DNA of 64,000 nucleotides, from NCBI GenBank assembly GCA_002269645.1, contig NIVC01001205.1, positions 186,001 to 250,000 of the forward strand, read 5' to 3'. The position numbers were made by a program, and so were the translations under genes. Below the pieces are notes generated by a model. The model was not told where the DNA came from. It made no database searches and worked only from the letters and a program-made list of their open reading frames with translations. The stretch is from Macrostomum lignano. Taxonomy: Eukaryota. Numbering within the stretch: the stretch's first letter is position 1; each line of letters opens with the position of its first letter. Of the stretch, positions 1-41,139 are shown piece after piece.

Positions 1-235
<235 letters not shown>

Positions 236-249
236 TATTTTTTTTGCAG

Positions 250-1661
250 CATCAAACGTCAACCATGCATATGACGGGTCAACTTCGCGGCCTTCAACGG
301 ACCTGATCCCAGCTTTTCGCAGCTGCTGCTACCCCGGCTTGCAACTTCCGGTGCCTGGCAGATCTCAGATTCATGCAGATGTGATCTCAAAGATACATGA
401 AGCTATGAAGATTTACCCACCGCATCTGGTAGCCTCAGCCGAACCGAATCACGAAGGCCAGCAGCTCAGGTTCAGCACGTCTTTTCTCGAGCGGCCGCTG
501 ATCCGAAACCTGAGCAGCTTGCAGGGCCAGGTCTTCGTCATTGTCAAGCACCTCATCAAGCAAGTGCTGGCAAAGAGATCAGTGAGAGGTCTGAAGACTT
601 ATCACGTGAAGACTGTGTTTTTCTATCTGCTGGATGAAACGCCAGAGCGGGAGTGGCAACCGGACAATCTGGTGAAGCTGGTCAGGAGGGCTCTGACAAA
701 GCTGCTGGAGAGCCTGCAGTCCGGCACAGCTCAGGACTCCTGCATGATGCACTTCTTCATGCCGGACTGCCCGCTGTTTTTAAAGAAGAATCACGATCCG
801 AAACGGGAACTCGCGTCCGCTGTTGACGAACTGATTCAGGACCTGCCGTACCTGCTTCATCGCTTCATGAAGAAGAGGCTGCGACTGAACGGAACCAACG
901 AAGGAAAGTTCTGCTTCAACCCGTTCCTCATCTTGCCGGACCCGAATCCCCGGCCGGACCATCTGTGGCGCTCGGCTGTTGGCCAGATCGACAGTTGCGA
1001 CATCTACAATGCTGTCCGGAGCCTCTGGGTCCGGCTGTCGCGGGAAGCGGACGACTCAGTTGAAGCCGATGGTCAGTCGGCGCTGATGAAGGAAGCTTCG
1101 AGGCTGCCAGACTGCGCCAGCACGGTCAGATGCTGCTTAAAGGCGTTGATTTGCTTGAAGTACGGCAGGACTGACGAGGCCAGAAGCATTTTGAGCAGTT
1201 TTAAAGCAACAGACTCGAGATTCGTTCGTCACGAGGACCTTGACAGTGTCAGCGACGTGGACGCGTTCGTGCTGAACAAACTCGACACGTGCGATTGGGC
1301 AAAGAAGTTCTGCTTTGTTTTCTCTGGCCGGCCTCAGCTGGAGTTTCTTCCCAAGGAGATTAATCGGCACTTCCCAATCTGCATCCTGTATGTCAATGTG
1401 TTCTCCATCAACTTCCAGGCTCTGTACCGGTGCCTCTGTCTTCATCTGCACGTTGCGAACGAAAGCCAGGCTAAGTCTTGGTTTAAAGAGATTCTGGAAC
1501 AGGATGAAGCTCAGCTACAGGAGATCCTGGTGATGCTGCAGTTCTGCAAGGATCGCGAAATGCTGGTCTCGCTGATCCACAAGCACAGGAAGGCTATCTA
1601 TGAGCAGAAGCACACATTTGACATGGCTTTGAACTCAATGCTGGCCGATGTAAGTCGATAA
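250..1661 (+). CDS. Mab-21/cGAS-like receptor (cGLR) paralog 1, terminal exon; 5' exons lie outside the window
   Basis: The frame is open from the acceptor at 249 to TAA at 1661. Mab-21 motifs: TDLIPAFR (third catalytic Asp position), GLKTYHVKTVFFY and CMMHFFMPDCPLF. It is colinear with the 10745-12165 exon. Confidence 0.88.
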
Positions 1662-2780: not shown

Positions 2781-3159
2781 CAGACTCATTGAAGATAAAA
2801 ATCGTTGTTTCACTCCTGCAAGCTTTTTGAAATCTGAACATTACAGTACACTGTATTGCCGTGCTGTACATACTGTACTGTTAATATTGTAATTTGAATA
2901 TTAAATATTCTGCGTTTTTTACTTTTAATTTACAATGAATTATTCTTTTTAGTTTGGTTTATCGTTCTCTGAGTTAAACTAAAAATAGAGTTTCAAAATT
3001 TCCAGGCGAGACGAGGAGGCTGCCTTAGCTGCACCAATTCAGCTGAGCACGCGCTCACAAAGGGTAGACAACGTCTCTGACATTACATGTAACATACATC
3101 TGCAGTGGTTCACGCAGCTTTTTGATTGGAGGGACAGCAACCCGATGGGGTGCCAATAT

Positions 3160-3290
3160 TTGGTCTCTTGGTAGTTTCCATTGTCTTTTGGTGGTCTTCC
3201 CTGTCTCATGGTGGGCGCCCCTGTCTCTTGATGGTCGCCCCTGTCTCTTGATGGTCGCCCCTGTCTCTTGGTGGTCGCCCCTGTCTCTCG
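3160..3290. repeat. GTCGCCCCTGTCTCTTGGTG minisatellite family, copy 1
   Basis: The same core recurs at 7140-7835 and 10340-10650. Confidence 0.85.
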
Positions 3291-3721
3291 AATTGTCGAG
3301 TGCTAGGTTACAAGTGGAATATTTTTCATTTAGTAAAGACTGTAAAATCAATATTTGACTACTAAGTTAATTCCTGAAAAGATCATTAAAAAGTGGCGCA
3401 TTGTCAGGCAGCAGTAGCTTACCTTAAAGAAAATCTTCCACTTAGCATAGGAACTTCCTGGATCGATTTTAAGAATAATAAAAAAACTACGCTCGTAAAA
3501 GGCTACATGAGTCAAGCACCAGCTCAATCAATTTTATTGTCATCGGTCATGAACTGTGTTCGTCGTAGATAATTACAATTTTATTGATCTCTTAGACCGA
3601 TTGCATCCGGTCACAGACGGCCTACAAATAGCCAGAAAGCTGCGCAGACCCAGAAGCAAGTCTAACCGACATCAAAGCAGTCTCAAAGCCGAACTCGAAC
3701 ACTCCAAAGAAGCCGGTCGCC

Positions 3722-6807: not shown

Positions 6808-7139
6808 ATGCTCCACCATTGCCGCCCTGTTATGCTGGGTCAGCTGATCATGTACTAAAATAGCTACAAGAGTACAGACACTCAGATGCTCATTGTTCAG
6901 CTCTCAGCTCCTCAGCTCTCTTTCTCTCTCTCTCTCTCCGCTCTAACCATTGTGAGGCTATTCCGTAATGGCTCAAATTACATTGAAATCCCCCCCAGTA
7001 CACTCGTACTAGTTTTGCCAGTTGCAGAATAGCGATACAGAGAGTCGCGGAGTTAAGGACAAAATCAGCCTTCTTGTCTCTGCCAGTACTAGGTGTTTCA
7101 AATAGCATGAATTTTTCAGTAGCTCGAATGCTTGACTGT

Positions 7140-7835
7140 CTGTCTCTTGGTGGTTGCCCCTGCCTCTTGGTGGGTATCATGTCTCTTGGTGGGCGTCATG
7201 TCTCTTGGTGGATGTCAATGTCTCGTGGTGGGCGTCATGTCTCTTGGTGGGCGTCATGTCTCTTGGTGGATGTCATGTCTCTTGGTGGATGTCATGTCTC
7301 TTGGTGGATGTCATGTCTCTTGGTGGGCGTCAATGTCTCTTGGTGGGCGTCATGTCTCTTGGTGGATGTCATGTCTCTTGCTGGATGTCATGTCTCTTGG
7401 TGGATGTCATGTCTCTTGGTGGATGTCATGTCTCTTGGTGGATATCATGACTCTTGGTGGGCGTCAATGTCTCTTGGTGGGCGTCATGTCTCTTGGTGGG
7501 CGTCATGTCTCTTGGTGGATGTCATGTCTCTTGGTGGATGTCATGTCTCTTGGTGGATGTCATGTCTCTTGGTGGATGTCATGTCTCTTGGTGGATGTCA
7601 TGTCTCTTGGTCGGCGTCATGTCTCTTGGTGGGCGTCATGTCTTTTGGTGGGTGTCAGTGTCATGCCTCTTGGTGGGTGTCATGCCTCTTAGTGGGCGTC
7701 ATGTCTCTAGGTGGGTGTCATGTCTCTTGTTGGGTGTCATGTCTCTTGATGGGTGTCATGTCTCTAGGTGGGCGTCATGTCTCTTGGTGAGTGCCATGTC
7801 TCTTGGTGGACGTCATGTCTCTTGGTGGTCGCCCC
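7140..7835. repeat. GTCATGTCTCTTGGTGG minisatellite (family copy 2)
   Basis: Tandem ~19-bp units; source of the SCLLV/CHVSWW ORFs. Confidence 0.95.
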
Positions 7836-8147: not shown

Positions 8148-9083
8148 ATGTCCACGACAGATTCTGAACAGCTGATTTTTCGAGACAATGTTAGGAATTT
8201 TAAAATTTGGGATGTCAATTGGCAACTGAAAAATGGCAATTTGAAAGTAAACAGTCCGGATGCCAGAGGCAGGACGGCACTGACAGACTCTGCTTGGCTT
8301 GGCTACGCCGCAATGTCCGAACTGCTTATTCGCCACAGCGCCGAGGTAAACGCGATTGACGCAATTCAAACATCACCACTCCATCGAGCGGCCTGGAACG
8401 GACACGCGGCAACAGTTTGGATCCTTCTGAAGAACGGTGCGAACCCGAATCTGCCCAATGGCATTGGCAGGACACCGTTGCATGCCTCAGCTGGCAATGG
8501 TCACGTGGATTGCGTGAAGCTGCTGCTTGACTATCGTGCCGATAGCAACTATCAGGATGCGGATGGCTGGTCGCCTCTGCATGAAGCAGCAATGCGAAAT
8601 CGGAGCAGTAAAGCATTGAATATGCTAATAAGGCATCAAGGCGCACAAGCCAACATTGATCTCCAAACTCTAGTAGGACAGACACCGCTCCACATCGCTG
8701 CCAGGTGTGGCGCCAAGCTAGCTGTCTGTGATCTTATTAGTGCAGGCGCCAACGTCATTGCTCTGGACAATAGCGGGTCGAGTCCGCTGCACTATGCGGT
8801 GACCGCTGGAAATCAGGATGTGGTGTCTCATCTTTTGAAGTCCGGATGCAATCCAAATCAATGCAATGTATTCGGCTTTACGCCGGTGCGCCTGGCGGTA
8901 TTTTTTGGCCTTACAAACATCTTGGCTCAGTTGGTGTCCTATAAGGAGCCATACTTGGGTACGGAAACTGTCAGTTTTATAGCATTTTGTGAAATATTTA
9001 TACCGCATTAACATCACACTTATGGACTTTTCAGCCTTTTTATTGACCAAGACAAGAGATCGCGAGTTGGACTGGTCCCAAAA
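8148..9083 (+). CDS. Ankyrin-repeat region (7 clear repeats plus a possible degenerate one); exons 8148-8958 and 9035-9083; predicted N-terminus of cGLR paralog 2
   Basis: Ankyrin motifs GRTAL, TSPLH, GRTPLH, GWSPLH, GQTPLH, GSSPLH and GFTPV. A 5'UTR intron runs 8040(GTAAGT)-8111(TTTCAG). Coding donor GTACGG at 8959, acceptor TTTTCAG at 9034, donor GTACGT at 9084. Confidence 0.9.
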
Positions 9084-9139
9084 GTACGTTTGGTTCCTTT
9101 TACAATTAGTGGTACATCTAGTGCCATTGTGCTTTGTCA

Positions 9140-9770
9140 TGGTCTGTGATTGGAATTAGTCATGGTATATGATTGGAATTAGTCATGTTGTGTGATTGGA
9201 ATTAGTCATAGTGTGTGATTGGAATTAGTCATGGTGTGTGATTGGAATTAGTCATGGTGTGTGATTGGAATTAGTCATGGTGTGTGATTGGAATTAGTCA
9301 TGTTGTGTGATTAGAATTAGTCATGTTGTGTGATTGGAATTAGTCATGTTGTGTGATTGGAATTAGTCATAGTGTGTGATTGGAATTAGTCATAGTGTGT
9401 GATTGGAATTAGTCATGGTGTGTGATTGGAATTAGTCATGTTGTGTGATTGGAATTAGTCATAGTGTGTGATTGGAATTAGTCATGGTGTGTGATTGGAA
9501 TTAGTCATGGTGTGTGATTGGAATTAGTCATAGTGTGTGATTGGAATTAGTCATAGTGTGTGATTGGAATTAGTCATAGTGTGTGATTGGAATTAGTCAT
9601 GGTGTGTGATTGGAATTAGTCATGTTGTGTGATTGGAATTAGTCATGTTGTGTGATTGGAATTAGTCATGGTGTGTGATTGGAATTAGTCATACTGTGTG
9701 ATTGGAATTAGTCATGTTGTGTGATTGGAATTAGTCATGGTGTGTGATTGGAATTAGTCATGGTGTGATT
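9140..9770. repeat. 23-bp intronic minisatellite TGGAATTAGTCATGGTGTGTGAT
   Basis: About 27 tandem units. Confidence 0.97.
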
Positions 9771-9815
9771 GCATGCTTTTTAAGACACATTTATTTTACT
9801 GTCGCACTGTTAGAG

Positions 9816-12165
9816 TTACTATAGTAGGACTTTTTGTAAATCCATCTCATTGAAAAATTTCAGTTCTGACGAAAGAGCCTTCAGCCAAGAGCTGCACGAA
9901 GCCATGAATGCAGCAGGGTTCGTGACGGACAGAGCCCGCGTGATGGCAGCGGTTGTAAATTGTGAGCAGGACATCCTACGAGCCAGGTGGAAAAGTGAAA
10001 GCATCTATATAGTGGGAAGTTATGCCGAGTGTTGGGGCAACAACCGCTCAAGAATGAATGGCACCACGGATTTGAAATCAGATGTGGACATAGTTGATTT
10101 GAACCGCACGGCATTATTCCACGTCAAAGAACAATGTCAGTGCACAATCGATGCCCAACATTCATTGGTTGCAGCTGCTATGCGTAAACACGATGCACGG
10201 AACACTTTTGAGTATTTCCAAGGTCATTTATGCATCTCTGGAATAAGTAAGTCGCATGCCGATTTTGAGTACTCCAGTGGGATACGCGGAAATTTTAATT
10301 GGAGGAGCTGCAACCCTAAGGGTACCGATGTTTGGTGTCTTAGTGGGCGCCACTATCTCTTGGTGGTTGCCCCTGTTTCTTAGTGGTTGCCCCTGTCTCT
10401 TGGTGGTCACCCCTGTCTCTTGGTGGTCGCCCCTGTCTCTTGGTGGTCACCCCTGTCTCTTCGTGGTCGCCCCTGTCTCTTGGTGTGCGCCACTGTCTCT
10501 TCGGCGCTCCTGTCTCTTGGTGGTCACCCCTGTCTCTTGGTGTGCGCCCCTGTCTCTTGGTAGTCGCTCCTGTCTCTTGGTGGTCACCCCTGTATCTTGG
10601 TGGTCACCCCTGTCTCTTGGTGGTCACCCCTGTCTCTTGGTGGTCAAACAGGGTGAGATCGGTGGATGTCATGTTCAAGAGGTTGTGAAGGTAAATCCTG
10701 TTATTAGTTTATCTTAGTTTCCTATTACCTATCATATCCCACAGCTTCCAAGCCAGCTCAGTCGTGGGACGGATTTTCTATTCTGAGGCCTGCAACTGAC
10801 CTTGTGCAGGCATTCAAGCTATGCACCTATCCTCGAATCCAACTACTCGAGCCGGGATACACTACCCAGATTCCTGAAGACATCATCGAGCAGCTCAAAT
10901 GCGACTTGAAGAACTATCCGTATCACGTCGTTAAGGCAGCTCCGCCAGGTGAGGAAGGTAAAAAATGTAGAGGAAGTGCAGCATTTCTTGAGAATCGGCT
11001 TCTGCGTAGCATGACTACTGTTCAGGGACAGGTGTACAGCGTGATTAAAGACCTGGTGAAAGAAGAGATTAGCAAAAGAGCCATAGGCCTGAGGTCTTAC
11101 CACGCGAAGACATTGATGTTTCAACTGCTTGACAAGATACCGCGCGATGACTGGAAGGTTGAAAATTTCATCAAGATAGTCCGGATCGCTCTTGAAATGC
11201 TGCGAACGGCCTTACTGCAAGAGCCTCAGTCCTCAAAGTGCATGAGCCACTTCTTCTTTCGTGACGCGCCGCTTTATTTAAAAATTGATCACAACGAGAA
11301 AAGCCAAATTGCGGAGGCTGTGGCGGCGATTGAGGCAAACCTCATTGGCTTTTTGAGACAGTTCAAGGATCAGCTGCAACCTCTGGTTGGTGGAGGCAAT
11401 TTGGTGTTTCACCCGTTCATGCTGGTACCAGATCCTTCGCCGCCATCTCTGAACTACTCACGGGACACCCCGCTGTACTACTACGAAGTGTACACGGCAG
11501 TGCGGGATGCCCTACTCAGTTTATCCAGTGCCGAGAGTCGAGATGTTGGCCATCGCGACCTGCTGCGCAATCTCTCCAAGATTCCTGACTTTGCTCGCAT
11601 CGCGCGGGAAACGCTGAAAGCGCTGGCTTTATTGGATCTCGGGAAAAATGATGAAGCCAAGAAGATCTTGCGCGCTTGTCTCGGACACCAGGTTTCCAAG
11701 GGAGTACCAATATCCGTGAACGATCCATCGTCAGACCCCGAGTTGTTGAAGGAAAGCGTCAAAAGGCACCTAGAAAGTGTTGACTCCGCTTGGATGTTCT
11801 GCTTTGTCTTCAACAAGCCTCTGCAACTTTCCATGCTTCCCGAATATGCAAGACAGCTCTTCCCCAAGTGCATACTCTACGTCAACGTGTACTACTTGAA
11901 CTTCAACGCCCTGTTCAAGTTTCTCTGCCTTGATCAAAGTATTGTCAACACTTCAACATCGGCTGTATGGTTCGAAGACTCTTTGCAGAGTCACGATTCT
12001 CAGGAGGTTTTGACAACGCTGGAATTCTGTCGGGACACGCAACTGAAAGCCAAACTAATCCGCAGAGCTGCTGGGACCATGGCCGATCAGATTAACGACT
12101 TTCAAGCGATTTGGGCCCTGCTGGCGAAGGACGTGAGTAGCATTGCCGTCTTTCATGCACTGTAG
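9816..12165 (+). CDS. Mab-21/cGAS-like nucleotidyltransferase (cGLR) paralog 2; exons ~9816-10246 and 10745-12165
   Basis: NTase motifs IVGSYAE and SDVDIV, third Asp in TDLVQAF, GLRSYHAKTLMF and CMSHFFF. Donor GTAAGT at 10247 and acceptor CCCACAG at 10744 join in phase 1 (ISGI-T-SKPAQ). AATAAA follows at 12169. Confidence 0.9.
10340..10650. repeat. GTCGCCCCTGTCTCTTGGTG minisatellite (family copy 3) in a cGLR2 intron
   Basis: Tandem ~20-bp units inside the 10247-10744 intron. Confidence 0.9.
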
Positions 12166-13482
12166 CGAAATAAATAAACTATTTAATTAGAATTAAAAAT
12201 GAACAAAACGGCCAGTGCGGCGCCGGGCCCAAATGAGTATGTCTAAGGCATTTAATTAGGGAGGTTAAGTGTAGATAAGACAAGGAGGGGTGGATTGCCC
12301 GACAAAGAAAGAGGCGAGGTCAAAGAGCCAATCAGAGAGCTGCGAGGGAGAGAGAGAGAGAAAAATATCGAGACTGAACTAAGACAGAGAGGGGAGAGCA
12401 AACAGAGACAAGTGAAGGTGAACTAAGAAATGACTAAGAAGGTCGCGTCGTGTACGCTGTGATGTTATCAAAAAATAATAATAAAGTGTAAATTGAATGT
12501 TGTTTCAAGAAATTGTCTGAAAATGAAAGAAACCGCTAACGGGAATCTGAATATTATGAATCTTAATCGTAAAAGAAACACTCCAAAAGTTCCGTTTGAG
12601 TTTTTGGGTCATGCGAATGTATCAGCAGCAACCATGGTGATCAACTGCAGCCCGAGCTGATCCGAGTGTGCACCCAGCTCACCATCGACGAGGCAGTGGC
12701 CAGGGTTCGACGCACCAGCCCGGAGGCCGTGCAGGCAGGTGGAGAGCAGCGGTTTCGAGATTGTCAGCAACCAGCAGTTCGGCCGCCCCTGTTGGTGCAA
12801 TGATCGACTCGTGTCCGAGTGAGCTAGACTCAACTGGCTGATTTGTTGGCCACAGTCAAAGGATGACGTCATGTTTTAGAGTACTTACTTTAGGCTTTCT
12901 CTAGATCGAACTCGTGTAGGCCACTACGGGGTCGTGTCGAAGTTGATTCCAAGCGCATTAGTAGCCCTCTGTCAGCACCTGTACATGTACACATTCTCCT
13001 TACTCATTTGTAACATAATATATCATAAACATATATAATCTTTTCAGGCAGTCATGACTGTCTAACATAATCGAATTACAGTCATTAAGTTTTGTCAATT
13101 TCTATTGTACTAAAAGCTACTCTAAGTAGAGTACAAAAACACACCCAGAAATTGCCAGAATTCGACAATCCATTCGAACAGTGGGACAGCGTTGAACTAA
13201 AAATATTATAAATTAAAGCAACAATTTCTAGTGAGAAGTTTCCAGATTGAGCTCTTATCGGCTCTGAGATTCAAGCTGCTGCTACTACTGAAGACTTTGG
13301 TTCGCGGGCGGCCCTGCGGCCTAACTCTGGCGGCCTCAGCAACTCGGCTGCTGTCACGATCGCAGCTCCACAGTGAGACGTGACTCGGACAGCCACATCG
13401 GACCTGCAACTGCAGCAGAACCTCAGCTGAGGCCGCGCCACTCAATCTGGCGAGATTCCACGCCCTCCACGCATTCCAGCAG

Positions 13483-13625
13483 CAGCTCGAGTGGATAAAT
13501 GCCGACTTGCAAGGCCTGCCCAAATTTGCAACTCAAAGTGGCCGCTCCAATCAGAGACTCCCATTGGCGACTCAGCAAATGCAGCACCGCCAGCTACTCG
13601 CTGCCTGCCTCGCCGCAGCCACTGC
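13483..13625 (+). pseudogene. Truncated duplicate of the promoter, 5'UTR and first ~15 codons of the C-type lectin gene at 62540
   Basis: A 143-bp block highly similar to 62444-62586. ATG at 13579 gives MQHRQLLAACLAAAT, then the sequence runs into a 35-bp minisatellite. Confidence 0.8.
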
Positions 13626-13857
13626 CAGTCTCTGGCATTGGACATCTGGCTCAGTGCTGCCAGCCTCTGGCATTGGACATCTGGCTCAGTGCTGCCAGCC
13701 TCTGGCATTGGACATCTGGCTCAGTGCTGCCAGCCTCTGGCATTGGACAGCTGGCTCAGTGCTGCCAGTCTCTGGCATTGGACATCTGGCTCACTGCTGC
13801 CAGTCTCTGGCATTGGACAGCTGGCTCACTGCTGCCAGTCTCTGGCATTGGACAGCT
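13626..13857. repeat. 35-bp minisatellite CAGTCTCTGGCATTGGACATCTGGCTCAGTGCTGC
   Basis: About 6.5 tandem units. Confidence 0.95.
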
Positions 13858-13940
13858 TGATTATTTTCATTTTCAGTATCGACCGCCTCATCTGGCGGCT
13901 GTCCTCGCACTGCAGCAAAATGTTTCAGCTTGCACAAATT

Positions 13941-15223
13941 TCAGGAAATATCAAAAAGTTGCTTCGAAGCCGACTGAGCGCTCGAACTCGCGGTTGCAGC
14001 AGCGGCAGCTTCTCTGCCGTCACGCTGGTGCTGCTTCAGAAGCAGCATTTCCATCTCCTTCAGCGAGTAGGAGAAGCCAAAGTTGTGACTCCAAATAACT
14101 CCCTCATCATGAGCACCTCCGATGGCAGCAGATGAGTTTTTGTACTCTCCGTTCGGGTGGGTGTGGAAACAGACTTTGAACCACCAGGCACCTTTAAACC
14201 TTGTTGCGCAGTTGCCAGAGCTGGTGTCGTGATCGGCGTCCTTCGTGGTGAACTGCATGCCGCTGCTGTAGGTGAGGCTGACGCCGATGCCGGCGCTGCC
14301 GGAGAAGCCGGAGACGCTCAGCCGGTAGTTGTCAGACTCGGGACCCACGGAGAAGCTGGAGTACTCGGCCCAGTGCTCAGAGTCGTTCCACGCCTTCATC
14401 AGGATCCTCAGCTTCCGAGGACCAGAAGCAGTGAGAGCGTGGAGAGAGTTCAGGCCTGGGAAGATGCGGGCGTCATGGCGCTGTTTGTCATTGAAATCCG
14501 AACTGGAAAAGCAAGCGAATGCAGCAGATCCGGGATGCACTCACCGATCCAGTAGTTTCTGTCGGGTCCCTCGCCGAACTCGCTCTGGTACTGAGTCCAG
14601 TTGTGGTAAAAGTCCACTGAGCCGGACAGCCTGTGCTGCACGGTGGTCCAGCAGTCACTGCCGGCTGTCTGCAAGGTGACAGGCGCACAGGTGTGCCAGC
14701 TCCAGCAGTCACTGCCGGCTGTCTGCAAGGTGACAGGCGCACAGGTGTGCCAGCTCCAGCAGTCACTGCCGGCTGTCTGCAAGGTGACAGGCGCACAGGT
14801 GTGCCAGCTCCAGCAGTCACTGCCGGCTGTCTGCAAGATGACAGGTGCACAGGTGCGCCAGCTCTTCTACTCTGCGTTAACGCTGACATGTCCAACTGAG
14901 TGACTCACCCGCACCCGCTGAGCTCCCTTGTTCGCATTGCGGCACTTGCTGCAGTGGCTCAGGCCCAGGCGGCACCTGAAGTGAGCGCACAGGCCGGAGC
15001 TGGCGCTGAACGACATCAGCTGCACAGCGGAGTCGCTGCTGGCACCCACCGCGCATTCAAACTCGCCTCGGGCTGGCAGCGACTTCACGGCCTCGTAGTC
15101 GGAGAGGCTCTCGCGGCTCGACTGCCACGTCTGCCCGGAGTCGGCGGCGGCTTCGGTCACGTGATGCAGCACTGCAGCCAGCAGCAGCAGCAGAGCGACT
15201 TGACGAGCGACTTGGAGCTGCAT
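13941..15223 (-). CDS. Secreted fibrinogen-related domain (FReD) protein with a degenerate PAN/Apple-like N-domain; exons 15223-14909, 14830(or 14776/14722/14668)-14545, 14455-13941
   Basis: Signal peptide [22 protein letters not shown] motifs [18 protein letters not shown]|LNSLH (restored by the 14544-14456 intron), FTTKDADHD and [27 protein letters not shown] donors at 14908 and 14544; a 5'UTR-exon donor at 16205. Confidence 0.9.
14650..14850. repeat. 54-bp tandem repeat (about 3.7 copies), each unit containing the FReD exon-2 acceptor
   Basis: On the minus strand each unit reads ...CTTGCAG|ACAGCCGGCAGTGACTGCTGG. Confidence 0.95.
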
Positions 15224-15825
15224 TGGTCTGAGTGTGGAATGTCGGGTTGGAGCTGCATTTGGTCTGAGTGTGGAATGTCGGGTTGGAGCTGCATTTGGTC
15301 TGAGTGTGGAATGTCGGGTTGGAGCTGCATTTGGTCTGAGTGTGGAATGTCGGGTTGGAGCTGCATTTGGTCTGAGTGTGGAATGTCGGGTTGGAGCTTC
15401 ATTTGCTCTGAGTGTGGAATGTCGGGTTGGAGCTGCATTTGGTCTGAGTGTGGAATGTCGGGTTGGAGCTGCATTTGGTCTGAGTGTGGAATGTCGGGTT
15501 GGAGCTGCATTGGTCTGAGTGTGGAATGTCGGGTTGGAGCTGCATTTGGTCTGAGTGTGGAATGTCGGGTTTGGCGCTGCATTTGGTCTGAGTGTGGAAT
15601 GTCGGGTTGGAGCTGCATTTGGTCTGAGTGTGGAATGTCGGGTTAGAGCTGCATTTGGTCTGAGTGTGGAATGTCGGGTTGGAGCTGCATTTGGTCTGAG
15701 TGTGGAATGTCGGGTTGGAGCTGCATTTGGTCTGAGTGTGGAATGTCGGGTTGGAGCTGCATTTGGTCTGAGTGTGGAATGGCGGGTTGGAGCTGCATTG
15801 GTCTGAGTGTGGAATGTCGGGTTTT
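15212..15825. repeat. 36-bp minisatellite (35-bp variants) whose last unit supplies the FReD acceptor and ATG
   Basis: About 17 units of TTGGAGCTGCATTTGGTCTGAGTGTGGAATGTCGGG. Confidence 0.95.
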
Positions 15826-40128: not shown

Positions 40129-41139
40129 ATGGGCACACCCAAAGAGAAGTTCGATGCAGCAGTTGGCGTCATTCGCAGCCTGCCAAAGGAGGGCGCCTTC
40201 AAGCCGTCAAACGAACTGTTATTAAGACTGTATTCTTTATATAAACAGGCGACTGAGGGTCCGTGCAGGCAGCCTCGGCCCGGCTTCTGGGATCCGGTCA
40301 GTCGTTACAAGTGGGACGCATGGAACTCCTTGGGCGACATGCAGCAGGAGACGGCCATGCTCGAATACGTTGAAGAATTGAAAAAAGTAATCGAGACAAT
40401 GCCTCACACGCCGGATGTGGAGAAATTCTTGGGAACTCTAGGCAGCTTCTATGAGGTTGTGTATGATCGCGGCGGGGAGGAGGGGCAGCATGAGGCTGCT
40501 GAAAGTGCCGCCGCCCCTGTAGCCACTTTTGCCATCGATGAACCGATTGAGGTGGAGGAATCCTCACCTTCGGAACTGTCTTCAGAGGACAATGATGAAG
40601 ACAACAGCGGTGCTGCTGCTTTGCTGCCGAATGGCGTCAGCGGTGGCGGAGTTGAAGAACGAAGCGAAGCCGATGAAGGTGAGGAGTTCTGTGACAGTCT
40701 GGACAGACCGTCGGCTGCTGCGCCTGGAGGACCCGTGGACAGTCTAGTTGGTGCTGCCGCTGCTGCTGCTACAACTTCCGCTACGTTGCAGTCTCCTATG
40801 CAGAATCCTTCCTCCTTGAAGCAGCAACAGCAGCAACCGCCTCCAAAGCAGACTTCCACTGCTCAGCTAACCGAAGCCCTGCGTCAGACCCGACTAATTC
40901 GCGATAGTCTCGCCCAACTCCAAGCCGATTTAGATCGAGTCCATACTAGATTGGATGGATTAGAAGTTACTACTAATAGAAGTAGCAGTAGCAGCGTTTG
41001 GCAAGCGGTATTTGGTAATGTGTCTCCTGCAACTATTGCTTTGGTGGTGCTGTGGCCTCTGCTGTTGCAGTTGCTGTTTAGAAGCGGTCGTCTGCCCGGT
41101 TTCTGGTGGCTTTGGCGGTCGAGACCCAAACGGAGATGA
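40129..41139 (+). CDS. ACBD5: Acyl-CoA-binding domain protein, ACBD4/ACBD5-like (336 aa, single coding exon)
   Basis: N-terminal ACBP domain (EKFDAAV..IRSLP, LLRLYSLYKQATEGPC, KWDAWNSLG, AMLEYV), an acidic linker, a coiled coil and a C-terminal hydrophobic TM segment followed by basic residues. ACBD4 versus ACBD5 cannot be resolved. Confidence 0.85.
   Translation: MGTPKEKFDAAVGVIRSLPKEGAFKPSNELLLRLYSLYKQATEGPCRQPRPGFWDPVSRYKWDAWNSLGDMQQETAMLEYVEELKKVIETMPHTPDVEKFLGTLGSFYEVVYDRGGEEGQHEAAESAAAPVATFAIDEPIEVEESSPSELSSEDNDEDNSGAAALLPNGVSGGGVEERSEADEGEEFCDSLDRPSAAAPGGPVDSLVGAAAAAATTSATLQSPMQNPSSLKQQQQQPPPKQTSTAQLTEALRQTRLIRDSLAQLQADLDRVHTRLDGLEVTTNRSSSSSVWQAVFGNVSPATIALVVLWPLLLQLLFRSGRLPGFWWLWRSRPKRR

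What the first reader, a model, noticed from the sequence alone, without database searches (positions are those of the whole stretch)
8148..12165. Ankyrin-repeat / cGAS-like receptor fusion (ANK-cGLR, ~900 aa) hidden by a micro-exon and minisatellite introns
Seen: the ankyrin ORF has a donor at 8959. A 76-nt intron leads to a 49-nt micro-exon (9035-9083, AFLLTKTRDRELDWSQ), whose phase-2 donor matches phase-2 AG sites at 9815, 9824 or 9827. These open into the NTase exon, which joins the Mab-21 exon in phase 1. The catalytic set (GS, DxD in SDVD, third D in TDLV) is intact. Established: cGAS and animal cGLRs make cyclic dinucleotide second messengers, and Drosophila cGLR1 senses dsRNA. Inference: this is a probably active flatworm-type cGLR whose ligand or partner recognition may involve 7-8 ankyrin repeats. 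The first available AG (9813) is out of frame, so the join is not certain.
Basis: partly seen in the sequence, partly recalled or inferred. Interest (0 to 1): 0.85.

Follow-up and report, generated by a model that had tools for sequence, protein, structure and literature searches.

The report
Annotated flatworm ankyrin–cGAS-like receptor gene
This is a real single gene of the flatworm Macrostomum lignano that joins ankyrin repeats to a cGAS-like immune-sensor enzyme, but the gene is already in GenBank and its family was already catalogued and partly tested in a 2023 survey, so it is a sound but ordinary finding.

Summary
The window is Macrostomum lignano DNA. The ankyrin ORF, the 49-nt micro-exon, the NTase exon and the Mab-21 exon are one gene. 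The five-exon model 8148-8958 / 9035-9083 / 9864-10246 / 10745-12132 / 12651-12806 translates exactly to GenBank PAA70816.1 (BOX15_Mlig021462g1, 927 aa), from an RNA-seq-derived annotation. The annotated CDS also continues past 12132 into a fifth exon.

The AlphaFold2 model of aa 271-877 (pLDDT 90, pTM 0.91) matches only cGAS, cGLR1 and MAB21L1 among the 50 hits listed. G338-S339, D360, D362 and D433 are intact and are conserved in about 90% of paralogs. The family is a large M. lignano expansion: 102 clusters, of which 36 of 56 scanned carry ankyrin repeats. A tandem paralog lies at window 249-1661.

Li et al. 2023 already describe ANK-cGLR fusions. They screened five M. lignano paralogs, and none was among their 15 selected active enzymes. 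Activity, ligand and downstream receptor therefore remain untested. A 220-aa C-terminal helical domain has no significant fold match in the PDB. Verdict: already known, modest interest.

The parts
8148..8958 (+). Exon 1: start codon and ankyrin-repeat domain (aa 1-270; six canonical repeats at about aa 40-240 plus a degenerate capping repeat). Ends in phase 1 before GT at 8959.
   Evidence: Pfam Ank_2 E=7e-49 and Ank E=6.5e-42 with 6 stretches; repeat listing; identical to PAA70816.1.
8959..9034 (+). Intron 1, 76 nt, GTACGG...TTTCAG. If retained, the ORF stops at 9009-9011 (287 aa, ankyrin only).
9035..9083 (+). Exon 2: 49-nt micro-exon (AFLLTKTRDRELDWSQ), the linker between the ankyrin domain and the NTase. 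Ends in phase 2.
   Evidence: Also present in the homeolog P0002 (AFLLTKTGDCELDWFQ).
9084..9863 (+). Intron 2, 780 nt, GTACGT...TTTCAG. Contains a 23-bp minisatellite x27.5 at 9136-9767.
9864..10246 (+). Exon 3: spine helix and N-lobe of the NTase core (aa 287-415). GS at 10015-10020, D360 at 10081-10083, D362 at 10087-10089. Ends in phase 1 before GTAAGT.
10247..10744 (+). Intron 3, 498 nt, GTAAGT...CCACAG, with a 20-bp minisatellite x15.6 at 10338-10645.
10745..12132 (+). Exon 4 (aa 415-877): third catalytic Asp D433 (10798-10800), Mab-21_C helical bundle (aa 510-608 = 11029-11325), and a family-specific C-terminal helical domain (aa 655-877 = 11464-12132).
   Evidence: Pfam Mab-21_C 32.6 bits against a cut-off of 24.1; profile hit to cGLR1 8gjy E=7e-7; AF2 and Foldseek.
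12133..12650 (+). Intron 4 in the annotated model (GTGAGT...CTGCAG, 518 nt). If not spliced, the ORF reads VSSIAVFHAL and stops at TAG 12163-12165, with AATAAA at 12169-12174. This is a possible alternative 3' end.
12651..12806 (+). Exon 5 of the annotated model: the last 50 aa (PELIRVCTQL...PPLLVQ) and stop TGA at 12804-12806.
   Evidence: Identity of the five-exon translation to PAA70816.1.
249..1661 (+). Last coding exon of an upstream tandem paralog, cut by the window start. It carries the third-Asp strand, Mab-21_C and the same C-terminal domain. It is about 37% identical to the gene studied.
   Evidence: tblastn; ORF; 290/299 aa identical to the PAA86972.1 construct of Li et al.; Pfam Mab-21_C E=4e-12.

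Best explanation
Window 8148-12806 (+) is one protein-coding gene of Macrostomum lignano, GenBank PAA70816.1 / BOX15_Mlig021462g1. I put the identification at about 0.95.

The protein has four parts:
- about seven N-terminal ankyrin repeats;
- a short linker encoded by the micro-exon;
- a cGAS/Mab-21-type nucleotidyltransferase (Pol-beta-like N-lobe plus Mab-21_C helical bundle);
- a roughly 220-aa helical C-terminal domain found throughout this family.

It is one member of a large, species-restricted expansion of ANK-cGLR genes. Some of these lie in tandem, and they were further duplicated by the recent genome duplication of this species.

The mechanism is inferred, not shown; I put it at about 0.55. 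Like other cGAS-like receptors, the protein rests inactive. Binding of a ligand, sensed by or gated through the ankyrin and/or C-terminal domains or by the core itself, repositions the GS loop. The triad D360/D362/D433 then coordinates two metal ions and condenses NTPs into a cyclic or linear oligonucleotide second messenger. An unidentified downstream receptor reads that signal.
For: Gene model:
- Frames and GT-AG sites are all compatible.
- The five-exon translation is identical to PAA70816.1.
- That annotation derives from RNA-seq and transcriptome assemblies (Wudarski 2017, PMC5730564).
- The homeolog P0002 has the same junctions.
- dN/dS is 0.27 (dS 0.050, dN 0.013) over 2631 nt against that homeolog. 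Exons are about 98% identical; the collinear stretches that include introns are about 95%.

Architecture:
- 36 of 56 family members have ankyrin repeats and 46 of 56 hit Mab-21_C.
- Li et al. Table S2 lists Ank_2 in several M. lignano cGLRs.

Fold:
- AF2 gives pLDDT 90.2 and pTM 0.91.
- All 50 Foldseek PDB hits listed are cGAS, Cv-cGLR1 or MAB21L1. E is about 5e-7, probability 1.00, TM 0.45-0.54 per target, over about 360-420 alignment columns.
- The family profile hits cGLR1 (8gjy, E=7e-7) and mouse cGAS (E=2e-4) in the PDB.
- Pfam Mab-21_C is above its gathering score.

Active site:
- GS follows strand 1, D-x-D starts strand 2, and D433 lies on the neighbouring strand.
- Family conservation is G 56/58, S 56/58, D360 53/58, D362 54/58 and D433 49/55.
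- Spacings of 20 and 68 residues fall within the ranges in the Li et al. motif.
Against: - No enzymatic data exist for this protein.
- Five paralogous NTase constructs were purified by Li et al. and incubated with nucleic-acid PAMPs. None carries an active-enzyme label in Table S3.
- The N-lobe has no sequence-level match to Pfam Mab-21 PF03281, either in this protein or in any of the 56 paralogs.
- The residue before GS is Val, not the Q/T of the published motif.
- This paralog has Tyr at position 474, where 48 of 58 relatives have Cys within a conserved His/Cys set. It also has Cys for Gly in the EGWG motif.
- TM-scores to cGAS are only about 0.5.
- The platyhelminth rows I saw in Li et al. 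Table S5 show no STING (and no cGLR), and M. lignano is not in that table. No reader for the signal is known.
Confidence: 0.6

Rival explanations
1. Catalytically silent scaffold. The protein keeps the cGAS/Mab-21 fold but, like MAB21L1 or MID49/51, acts as a nucleotide- or protein-binding adaptor and makes no second messenger. The ankyrin and C-terminal domains would recruit partners.
For: None of the five M. lignano paralogs in the Li et al. screen is labelled active. MAB21L1 (5eom, 5eog) is among the top fold hits. The N-lobe is too divergent for PF03281. This paralog carries unusual substitutions (Y474, C343) at family-conserved positions. No STING is recorded in the flatworm rows I saw in Li et al. 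Table S5.
Against: The GS motif and all three acidic residues are kept in about 90% of some 58 paralogs that are only 25-40% identical. That is hard to explain without selection on catalysis. The screen used ANK-less constructs and only nucleic-acid ligands, so a negative result is weak. The profile hits cGLR1 and cGAS far better than MAB21L1 (7e-7 against 0.45).
Confidence: 0.3
2. Two separate genes, an ankyrin gene ending near 9011 and an independent cGLR gene starting near 9850, wrongly merged by gene models.
For: Retention of intron 1 gives a stop at 9009-9011. The ORF list shows an in-frame TTG/ATG-containing ORF from 9850. M. lignano transcriptional units can be polycistronic precursors resolved by trans-splicing.
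Against: All junction phases match. The transcript-derived GenBank model joins them at both homeologous loci. Two independent annotations, WormBase-type UniProt entries and GenBank, both fuse them. ANK plus Mab-21_C on one polypeptide is the family norm, 36 of 56. The micro-exon is conserved and the whole CDS shows dN/dS 0.27.
Confidence: 0.04
3. Decaying duplicate. This copy is one of many redundant paralogs drifting towards pseudogenisation after the recent genome duplication.
For: The Mlig_3_7 assembly holds extensive blocks at least 95% identical. This copy has singular substitutions at conserved positions. Its 3' end is ambiguous.
Against: The reading frame is open through 927 codons with canonical splice sites. 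dN/dS is 0.27 against the homeolog. The catalytic residues are intact.
Confidence: 0.06

Closest known systems
Macrostomum lignano ANK-cGLR paralogs catalogued by Li et al. 2023 (PAA86972.1, PAA45980.1, PAA57558.1, PAA93208.1, PAA68676.1; PMC9980059, Tables S2 and S3)
   Same: Same species, same family and the same conserved motifs (hhGS[FY]xEGWG, SDIDV, RPAxDxV, Mab-21_C, C-terminal helical domain); Table S2 lists Ank_2 hits in three of the five (PAA86972.1, PAA45980.1, PAA68676.1) and in other M. lignano cGLRs. A near-identical copy of PAA86972.1 sits 6.5 kb upstream in this window.
   Different: Only 25-40% identical to the gene studied. This paralog has a longer loop at aa 381-400, Y474 in place of the conserved Cys, and C343 for Gly. 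I could not find PAA70816.1 itself in the stored parts of their tables, which are truncated.
Vertebrate cGAS (e.g. 4o6a, 4k97, 6ct9)
   Same: Bilobed Pol-beta NTase plus helical-bundle fold, GS loop and three acidic residues in the same strand positions. These are the best Foldseek hits and are matched by the family profile at E about 2e-4.
   Different: 11-16% identity. There is no disordered basic N-terminus; about seven ankyrin repeats sit in front instead, and a 220-aa helical domain follows. The conserved His/Cys set lies in a different place from the cGAS zinc thumb (own knowledge of cGAS; not tested structurally). Ligand and product are unknown.
Invertebrate cGLR1 enzymes (Cv-cGLR1 8gjw; cGAS-like receptor 1 8gjy)
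   Same: Best sequence-profile match in the PDB (8gjy, E=7e-7, over the Mab-21_C region) and Foldseek rank 4.
   Different: [quoted passage not shown] The present protein has extra ankyrin and C-terminal domains and no known ligand.
[quoted passage not shown] 2023, Fig. 4C)
   Same: Same idea: a cGLR core with an appended ankyrin module in an expanded cGLR repertoire.
   Different: A cnidarian, not a flatworm. Relationship of the fusions (common origin or convergence) was not tested here. Those are a small minority (3 of 42) of the coral repertoire, whereas ANK fusion is the majority state in M. lignano.
MAB21L1 (5eom, 5eog)
   Same: Same fold, and among the 50 Foldseek hits listed.
   Different: A developmental protein with no demonstrated messenger synthesis (as stated in Li et al.). 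The profile match is much weaker (E=0.45). M. lignano has a separate canonical Mab-21 protein, PAA76228.1, which hits pfam03281 at 4e-91 in Li et al. Table S2.

Membership tests
cGAS-like receptor (cGLR), criteria of Li et al. 2023 | Active-site motif h[QT]GS X8-20 [DE]h[DE]h X50-90 h[DE]h | tested here: met
   I-V-G338-S339, 20 residues, D360-V-D362-I, 68 residues, T-D433-L. One deviation: Val instead of Q/T before GS. This holds for most of the family (V 36/58), including paralogs that Li et al. accepted (VMGS, ILGS, VFGS).
cGAS-like receptor (cGLR), criteria of Li et al. 2023 | Sequence homology across the C-terminal helix bundle | tested here: met
   Pfam Mab-21_C PF20266, aa 510-608, 32.6 bits against a gathering score of 24.1. 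The family profile hits cGLR1 8gjy at E=7e-7 and mouse cGAS at E=2e-4.
cGAS-like receptor (cGLR), criteria of Li et al. 2023 | Sequence homology across the N-terminal NTase core | tested here: inconclusive
   No hit to Pfam Mab-21 PF03281 for this protein or for any of 56 paralogs. phmmer against the PDB found nothing. The profile matches to the PDB cover only the C-lobe. N-lobe similarity is seen only at the fold level.
cGAS-like receptor (cGLR), criteria of Li et al. 2023 | Predicted structural homology to known cGLR/CD-NTase enzymes (AlphaFold2) | tested here: met
   AF2 pLDDT 90.2, pTM 0.91. All 50 Foldseek PDB hits listed are cGAS, Cv-cGLR1 or MAB21L1, with probability 1.00, E about 5e-7 to 5e-6, TM 0.45-0.54 per target, over 359-418 columns.
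cGAS-like receptor (cGLR), functional definition | Ligand-dependent synthesis of a nucleotide second messenger | not testable with these tools
Five paralogs were in the Li et al. screen without an active label.
cGLR-STING pathway | A STING (or other) receptor for the product encoded in the same genome | not tested
   The M. lignano proteome could not be searched by species with these tools. The platyhelminth rows I saw in Li et al. Table S5 show 0 cGLR and 0 STING, and the table does not contain M. lignano.
Ankyrin-repeat proteins | Tandem 33-residue ANK repeats | tested here: met
   Ank_2 E=7e-49, Ank E=6.5e-42 (6 stretches), and Ank_3/4/5 all above their cut-offs, aa 40-270. TPLH-type motifs at aa 43, 76, 109, 142, 179 and 212.
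TPR-cGLR fusions (Li et al. Fig. 1C) | Recognisable tetratricopeptide repeats appended to the cGLR core | tested here: not met
   TPR_8 scores only E=0.06, 14 bits against a cut-off of 25.7. There is no Pfam hit for aa 655-877. Foldseek on the confident domain model gives no hit below E=0.06, TM about 0.2, with only scattered TPR-like helical proteins.

The most novel reading that the evidence does not exclude
The M. lignano ANK-cGLR expansion, including this gene, is a cGLR system that does not sense nucleic acids. The ankyrin repeats and the structurally unmatched C-terminal domain would recognise protein or other non-nucleic-acid ligands. The enzyme would signal through a non-STING receptor, in a phylum otherwise reported to have lost cGLR-STING immunity. 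That would explain why ANK-less constructs given nucleic-acid PAMPs were not scored as active.
Probability: 0.15. Interest if true: 0.75.

Novelty: already known. Interest (0 to 1): 0.25.

Why it matters
As a gene it adds nothing new. The model is in GenBank, and both the ANK-cGLR architecture and the M. lignano family are documented in the 2023 cGLR survey.

What remains open is biological. No ligand, product or downstream receptor is known for any ANK-cGLR. Macrostomum appears to be an exception among flatworms in keeping and massively expanding cGLR-like genes. It is also a transgenic, RNAi-amenable model. The family could therefore be a tractable entry point for asking what appended repeat domains do in cGLR signalling, and whether cGLR signalling can run without STING. 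This particular paralog is not obviously the best representative, because it has atypical substitutions (Y474, C343).

Tried and rejected
The annotated acceptor is 9863/9864.
- phmmer of the cGLR part against PDB sequences found nothing. A family profile was needed.
- Pfam Mab-21 NTase PF03281 gave no match for this protein or for 56 paralogs.
Exon 4 was used as the query instead.
- TPR reading of the C-terminal domain: sub-threshold Pfam hit only and no significant Foldseek match.
- The homeologous locus L001 was fetched to look for an exon/intron conservation contrast. It is collinear at about 95-98%, introns and minisatellites included, so it is too close to define exons. It was useful only for dN/dS.
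- Literature searches for the gene identifiers (Mlig021462, Mlig003219, Mlig012742, PAA70816), and for Macrostomum with cGAS, STING or Mab-21, found no functional or expression study of this gene.
- PAA70816.1 and PAA55751.1 were not found in the stored, truncated supplementary tables of Li et al..
- I considered searching for a STING homolog in M. lignano and dropped it, because the protein-search tools cannot be restricted to one species.
Full report
**Origin of the window.** A search with the non-ankyrin part of the predicted protein returned two clusters, both from the free-living flatworm Macrostomum lignano, at 98% and 96% identity. Cluster look-ups name them as UniProt ANK_REP_REGION / Mab-21-like HhH/H2TH-like domain proteins and as GenBank hypothetical proteins BOX15_Mlig021462g1 (PAA70816.1, 927 aa) and BOX15_Mlig003219g1 (PAA55751.1, 888 aa).

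**Checking the observation.**
- ATG at 8148 and GT donor at 8959.
- A 76-nt intron.
- A 49-nt micro-exon 9035-9083 (AFLLTKTRDRELDWSQ) ending in phase 2.
- The phase-1 join 10246|GTAAGT ... cccacag|10745.

A fourth AG, in aaatttcag|T at 9862-9863, is also in frame. It is the one used in the public models, giving ...DWSQ-N-SDERAF....

The five-exon model 8148-8958 / 9035-9083 / 9864-10246 / 10745-12132 / 12651-12806 translates to exactly PAA70816.1. The annotated CDS therefore does not end at 12165. It uses a GTGAGT donor at 12133 and a last exon at 12651. This may be an alternative 3' end.

Introns 2 and 3 do carry minisatellites: a 23-mer x27.5 at 9136-9767 and a 20-mer x15.6 at 10338-10645.

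**Is it one gene?** Four lines of evidence say yes.
- The GenBank annotation of assembly Mlig_3_7 was built from RNA-seq with StringTie and TACO plus a de novo transcriptome. Gene boundaries were set from trans-splicing and poly(A) reads (Wudarski et al. 2017, PMC5730564). The annotated junctions are therefore transcript-derived. I could not inspect reads myself.
- The homeologous locus (L001, contig NIVC01002712.1) is collinear with the window, at about 95% over stretches that include introns and minisatellites and about 98% in exons. Its annotated protein has the same junctions.
- Over the 2631 nt of the four shared exons, dS = 0.050, dN = 0.013 and dN/dS = 0.27. Both copies, including the ankyrin exon and the micro-exon, are under purifying selection.
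- Among 56 family members scanned, 36 carry ankyrin repeats and 46 carry Mab-21_C. The fusion is the norm in this family. The members without ankyrin repeats may be partial models.

**What the protein is.**
- Pfam finds ankyrin repeats at aa 40-270 (Ank_2 E=7e-49; six Ank stretches) and Mab-21_C at aa 510-608 (32.6 bits, cut-off 24.1). It finds no match to the Mab-21 NTase model PF03281.
- An AlphaFold2 model of aa 271-877, built on a 62-sequence family alignment, is confident: pLDDT 90.2, pTM 0.91.
- All 50 Foldseek PDB hits listed are cGAS, the oyster Cv-cGLR1 or MAB21L1. Probability is 1.00, E is 5e-7 to 5e-6, TM is 0.45-0.54 per target, over about 360-420 alignment columns at 11-16% identity.
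- A 14-sequence family profile of the core hits cGLR1 (8gjy) at E=7e-7 and mouse cGAS at about 2e-4 among PDB sequences. MAB21L1 scores only 0.45.
- In the model, G338-S339 follow the first core strand, D360 and D362 open the next strand, and D433 lies on a neighbouring strand. From my own knowledge, this is the standard Pol-beta NTase arrangement.
- These residues are conserved across paralogs that are only 25-40% identical: G 56/58, S 56/58, D360 53/58, D362 54/58 and D433 49/55.
- The spacings of 20 and 68 residues fit the published motif. The one deviation is Val instead of Q/T before GS, which most of the family shares.

**Extra features.**
- The last roughly 220 aa (655-877) form a separate helical domain with a small beta element. 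It is conserved across the family and confidently modelled on its own (pLDDT 90.3, pTM 0.88).
- That domain has no Pfam match and no significant PDB fold match. The best Foldseek E is 0.06 with TM about 0.2, and the weak hits are scattered TPR-like proteins.
- A set of His and Cys residues in the N-lobe (H373, C378, C380, H408, C441, C474, H475) is conserved in the family and might bind a metal. This paralog alone has Tyr at 474.

**Family and context.**
- An exhaustive HMMER scan with exon 4 found 102 clusters (50% identity level) at E<=1e-3, of which 49 were at E<=1e-30.
- All ten high- and mid-ranking clusters I sampled are M. lignano. Among ten low-ranking clusters sampled, one is a Lingula anatina protein and several are unnamed proteins from ENA eukaryote assemblies. 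This is a lineage-restricted expansion.
- Window 249-1661 holds the last exon of a tandem paralog on the same strand. It is 290/299 aa identical to PAA86972.1.

**Comparison with what is known.**
- Li et al. 2023 (bioRxiv 10.1101/2023.02.22.529553, PMC9980059; published in Cell) catalogued about 3,000 cGLRs.
- They state that 87% are single-domain, but that some carry TPR or ankyrin modules (Fig. 1C, S2A, Table S2). They also note that most platyhelminths have none beyond Mab21-like proteins.
- Their Table S2 lists Ank_2 hits in M. lignano proteins PAA68676.1, PAA86972.1, PAA45980.1, PAA58690.1, PAA67649.1 and PAA68216.1.
- Their Table S3 shows that five M. lignano paralogs (samples 89-93) were purified as constructs that start near the NTase core, without the upstream region where Table S2 places ankyrin repeats, and were screened.
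- The architecture, the family and even the neighbouring paralog are therefore already in the literature. Catalytic activity of this clade has not been demonstrated.
- I did not find PAA70816.1 itself in the stored parts of their tables, which are truncated. No paper mentions the gene identifiers.

**Mechanism.**
- Shown: the gene structure, the domain composition, the cGAS-type fold, conservation of the catalytic residues, and purifying selection.
- Inferred: the protein is a ligand-activated nucleotidyltransferase that makes a nucleotide second messenger, and the ankyrin and/or C-terminal domains provide ligand or partner recognition or autoinhibition.
- Unknown: the ligand, the product and the receptor. 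The flatworm rows I saw in Li et al. Table S5 have no STING, and M. lignano is not in that table.
- The main rival is a catalytically silent scaffold of the MAB21L1 type. The negative screen and the atypical substitutions of this paralog speak for it. The family-wide retention of the triad speaks against it.

**Verdict.** The identification as an ANK-cGLR is right. 'Hidden' and the high novelty are not: the gene is annotated, and the kind is described for this very species. Interest is modest and lies in the untested biology of the family, not in the discovery of the gene.

Noticed in passing
window 1-1661 (+): A (TATC)n microsatellite runs to about 235. It is followed by the acceptor ttttttttgcag| and the last exon (249-1661) of a tandem ANK-cGLR paralog. 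That exon is 290/299 aa identical to PAA86972.1, sample 89 of the Li et al. 2023 biochemical screen. The intron sits at the same position (just before the third-Asp strand) as in the gene studied.
   Followed up: yes
window 7137-7828, 10338-10645, about 3055-3351: Related minisatellites share the core TCTCTTGGTGG (19-mer x36 upstream of the gene; 20-mer x15.6 in intron 3). The intron-3 array matches the upstream array of the homeologous locus at about 72%. The 23-mer array in intron 2 (9136-9767) is unrelated. Copy numbers differ between the two homeologous loci.
   Followed up: partly
window 14.9-16.2 kb, 29-32 kb, 37.4-38.0 kb, 38.7-39.5 kb, 42.1-44.6 kb, 52-54 kb, 59.3-60.5 kb, 63.3-64.0 kb: Many further minisatellite arrays give long repetitive ORFs on both strands. 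These are almost certainly not genes.
   Followed up: no
window 13941-14540 (-): An exon-like ORF encodes a fibrinogen C-terminal globular domain (Pfam Fibrinogen_C E=7.5e-35). It is a fibrinogen-related protein gene next to the cGLR gene on the opposite strand.
   Followed up: partly
window 40129-41139 (+): A 336-aa ORF has an N-terminal acyl-CoA-binding domain (Pfam ACBP E=2e-27) and a hydrophobic C-terminal tail, resembling ACBD4/5.
   Followed up: partly
window 10120-10170, 10225-10230, 10822-10824, 10921-10926 (aa 373-475): A family-conserved His/Cys set (H373, C378, C380, H408, C441, C474, H475) lies in the NTase lobe and may be a metal site. The window protein alone has Tyr at 474, and it has Cys for the conserved Gly in EGWG (aa 343).
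   Followed up: partly
window 11464-12132 (aa 655-877): A family-specific C-terminal helical domain is modelled with high confidence (pLDDT 90). It has no Pfam family and no significant match among PDB folds.
   Followed up: yes
L001 about 10345-15816 against window 12819-12821: The homeologous locus carries about 5.4 kb of extra sequence just downstream of the shared exon 5. Its GenBank model splices from the same AKD| donor into that insertion (the protein ends ...AKDITANKHDKESH). The 3' ends of the two copies therefore differ.
   Followed up: partly
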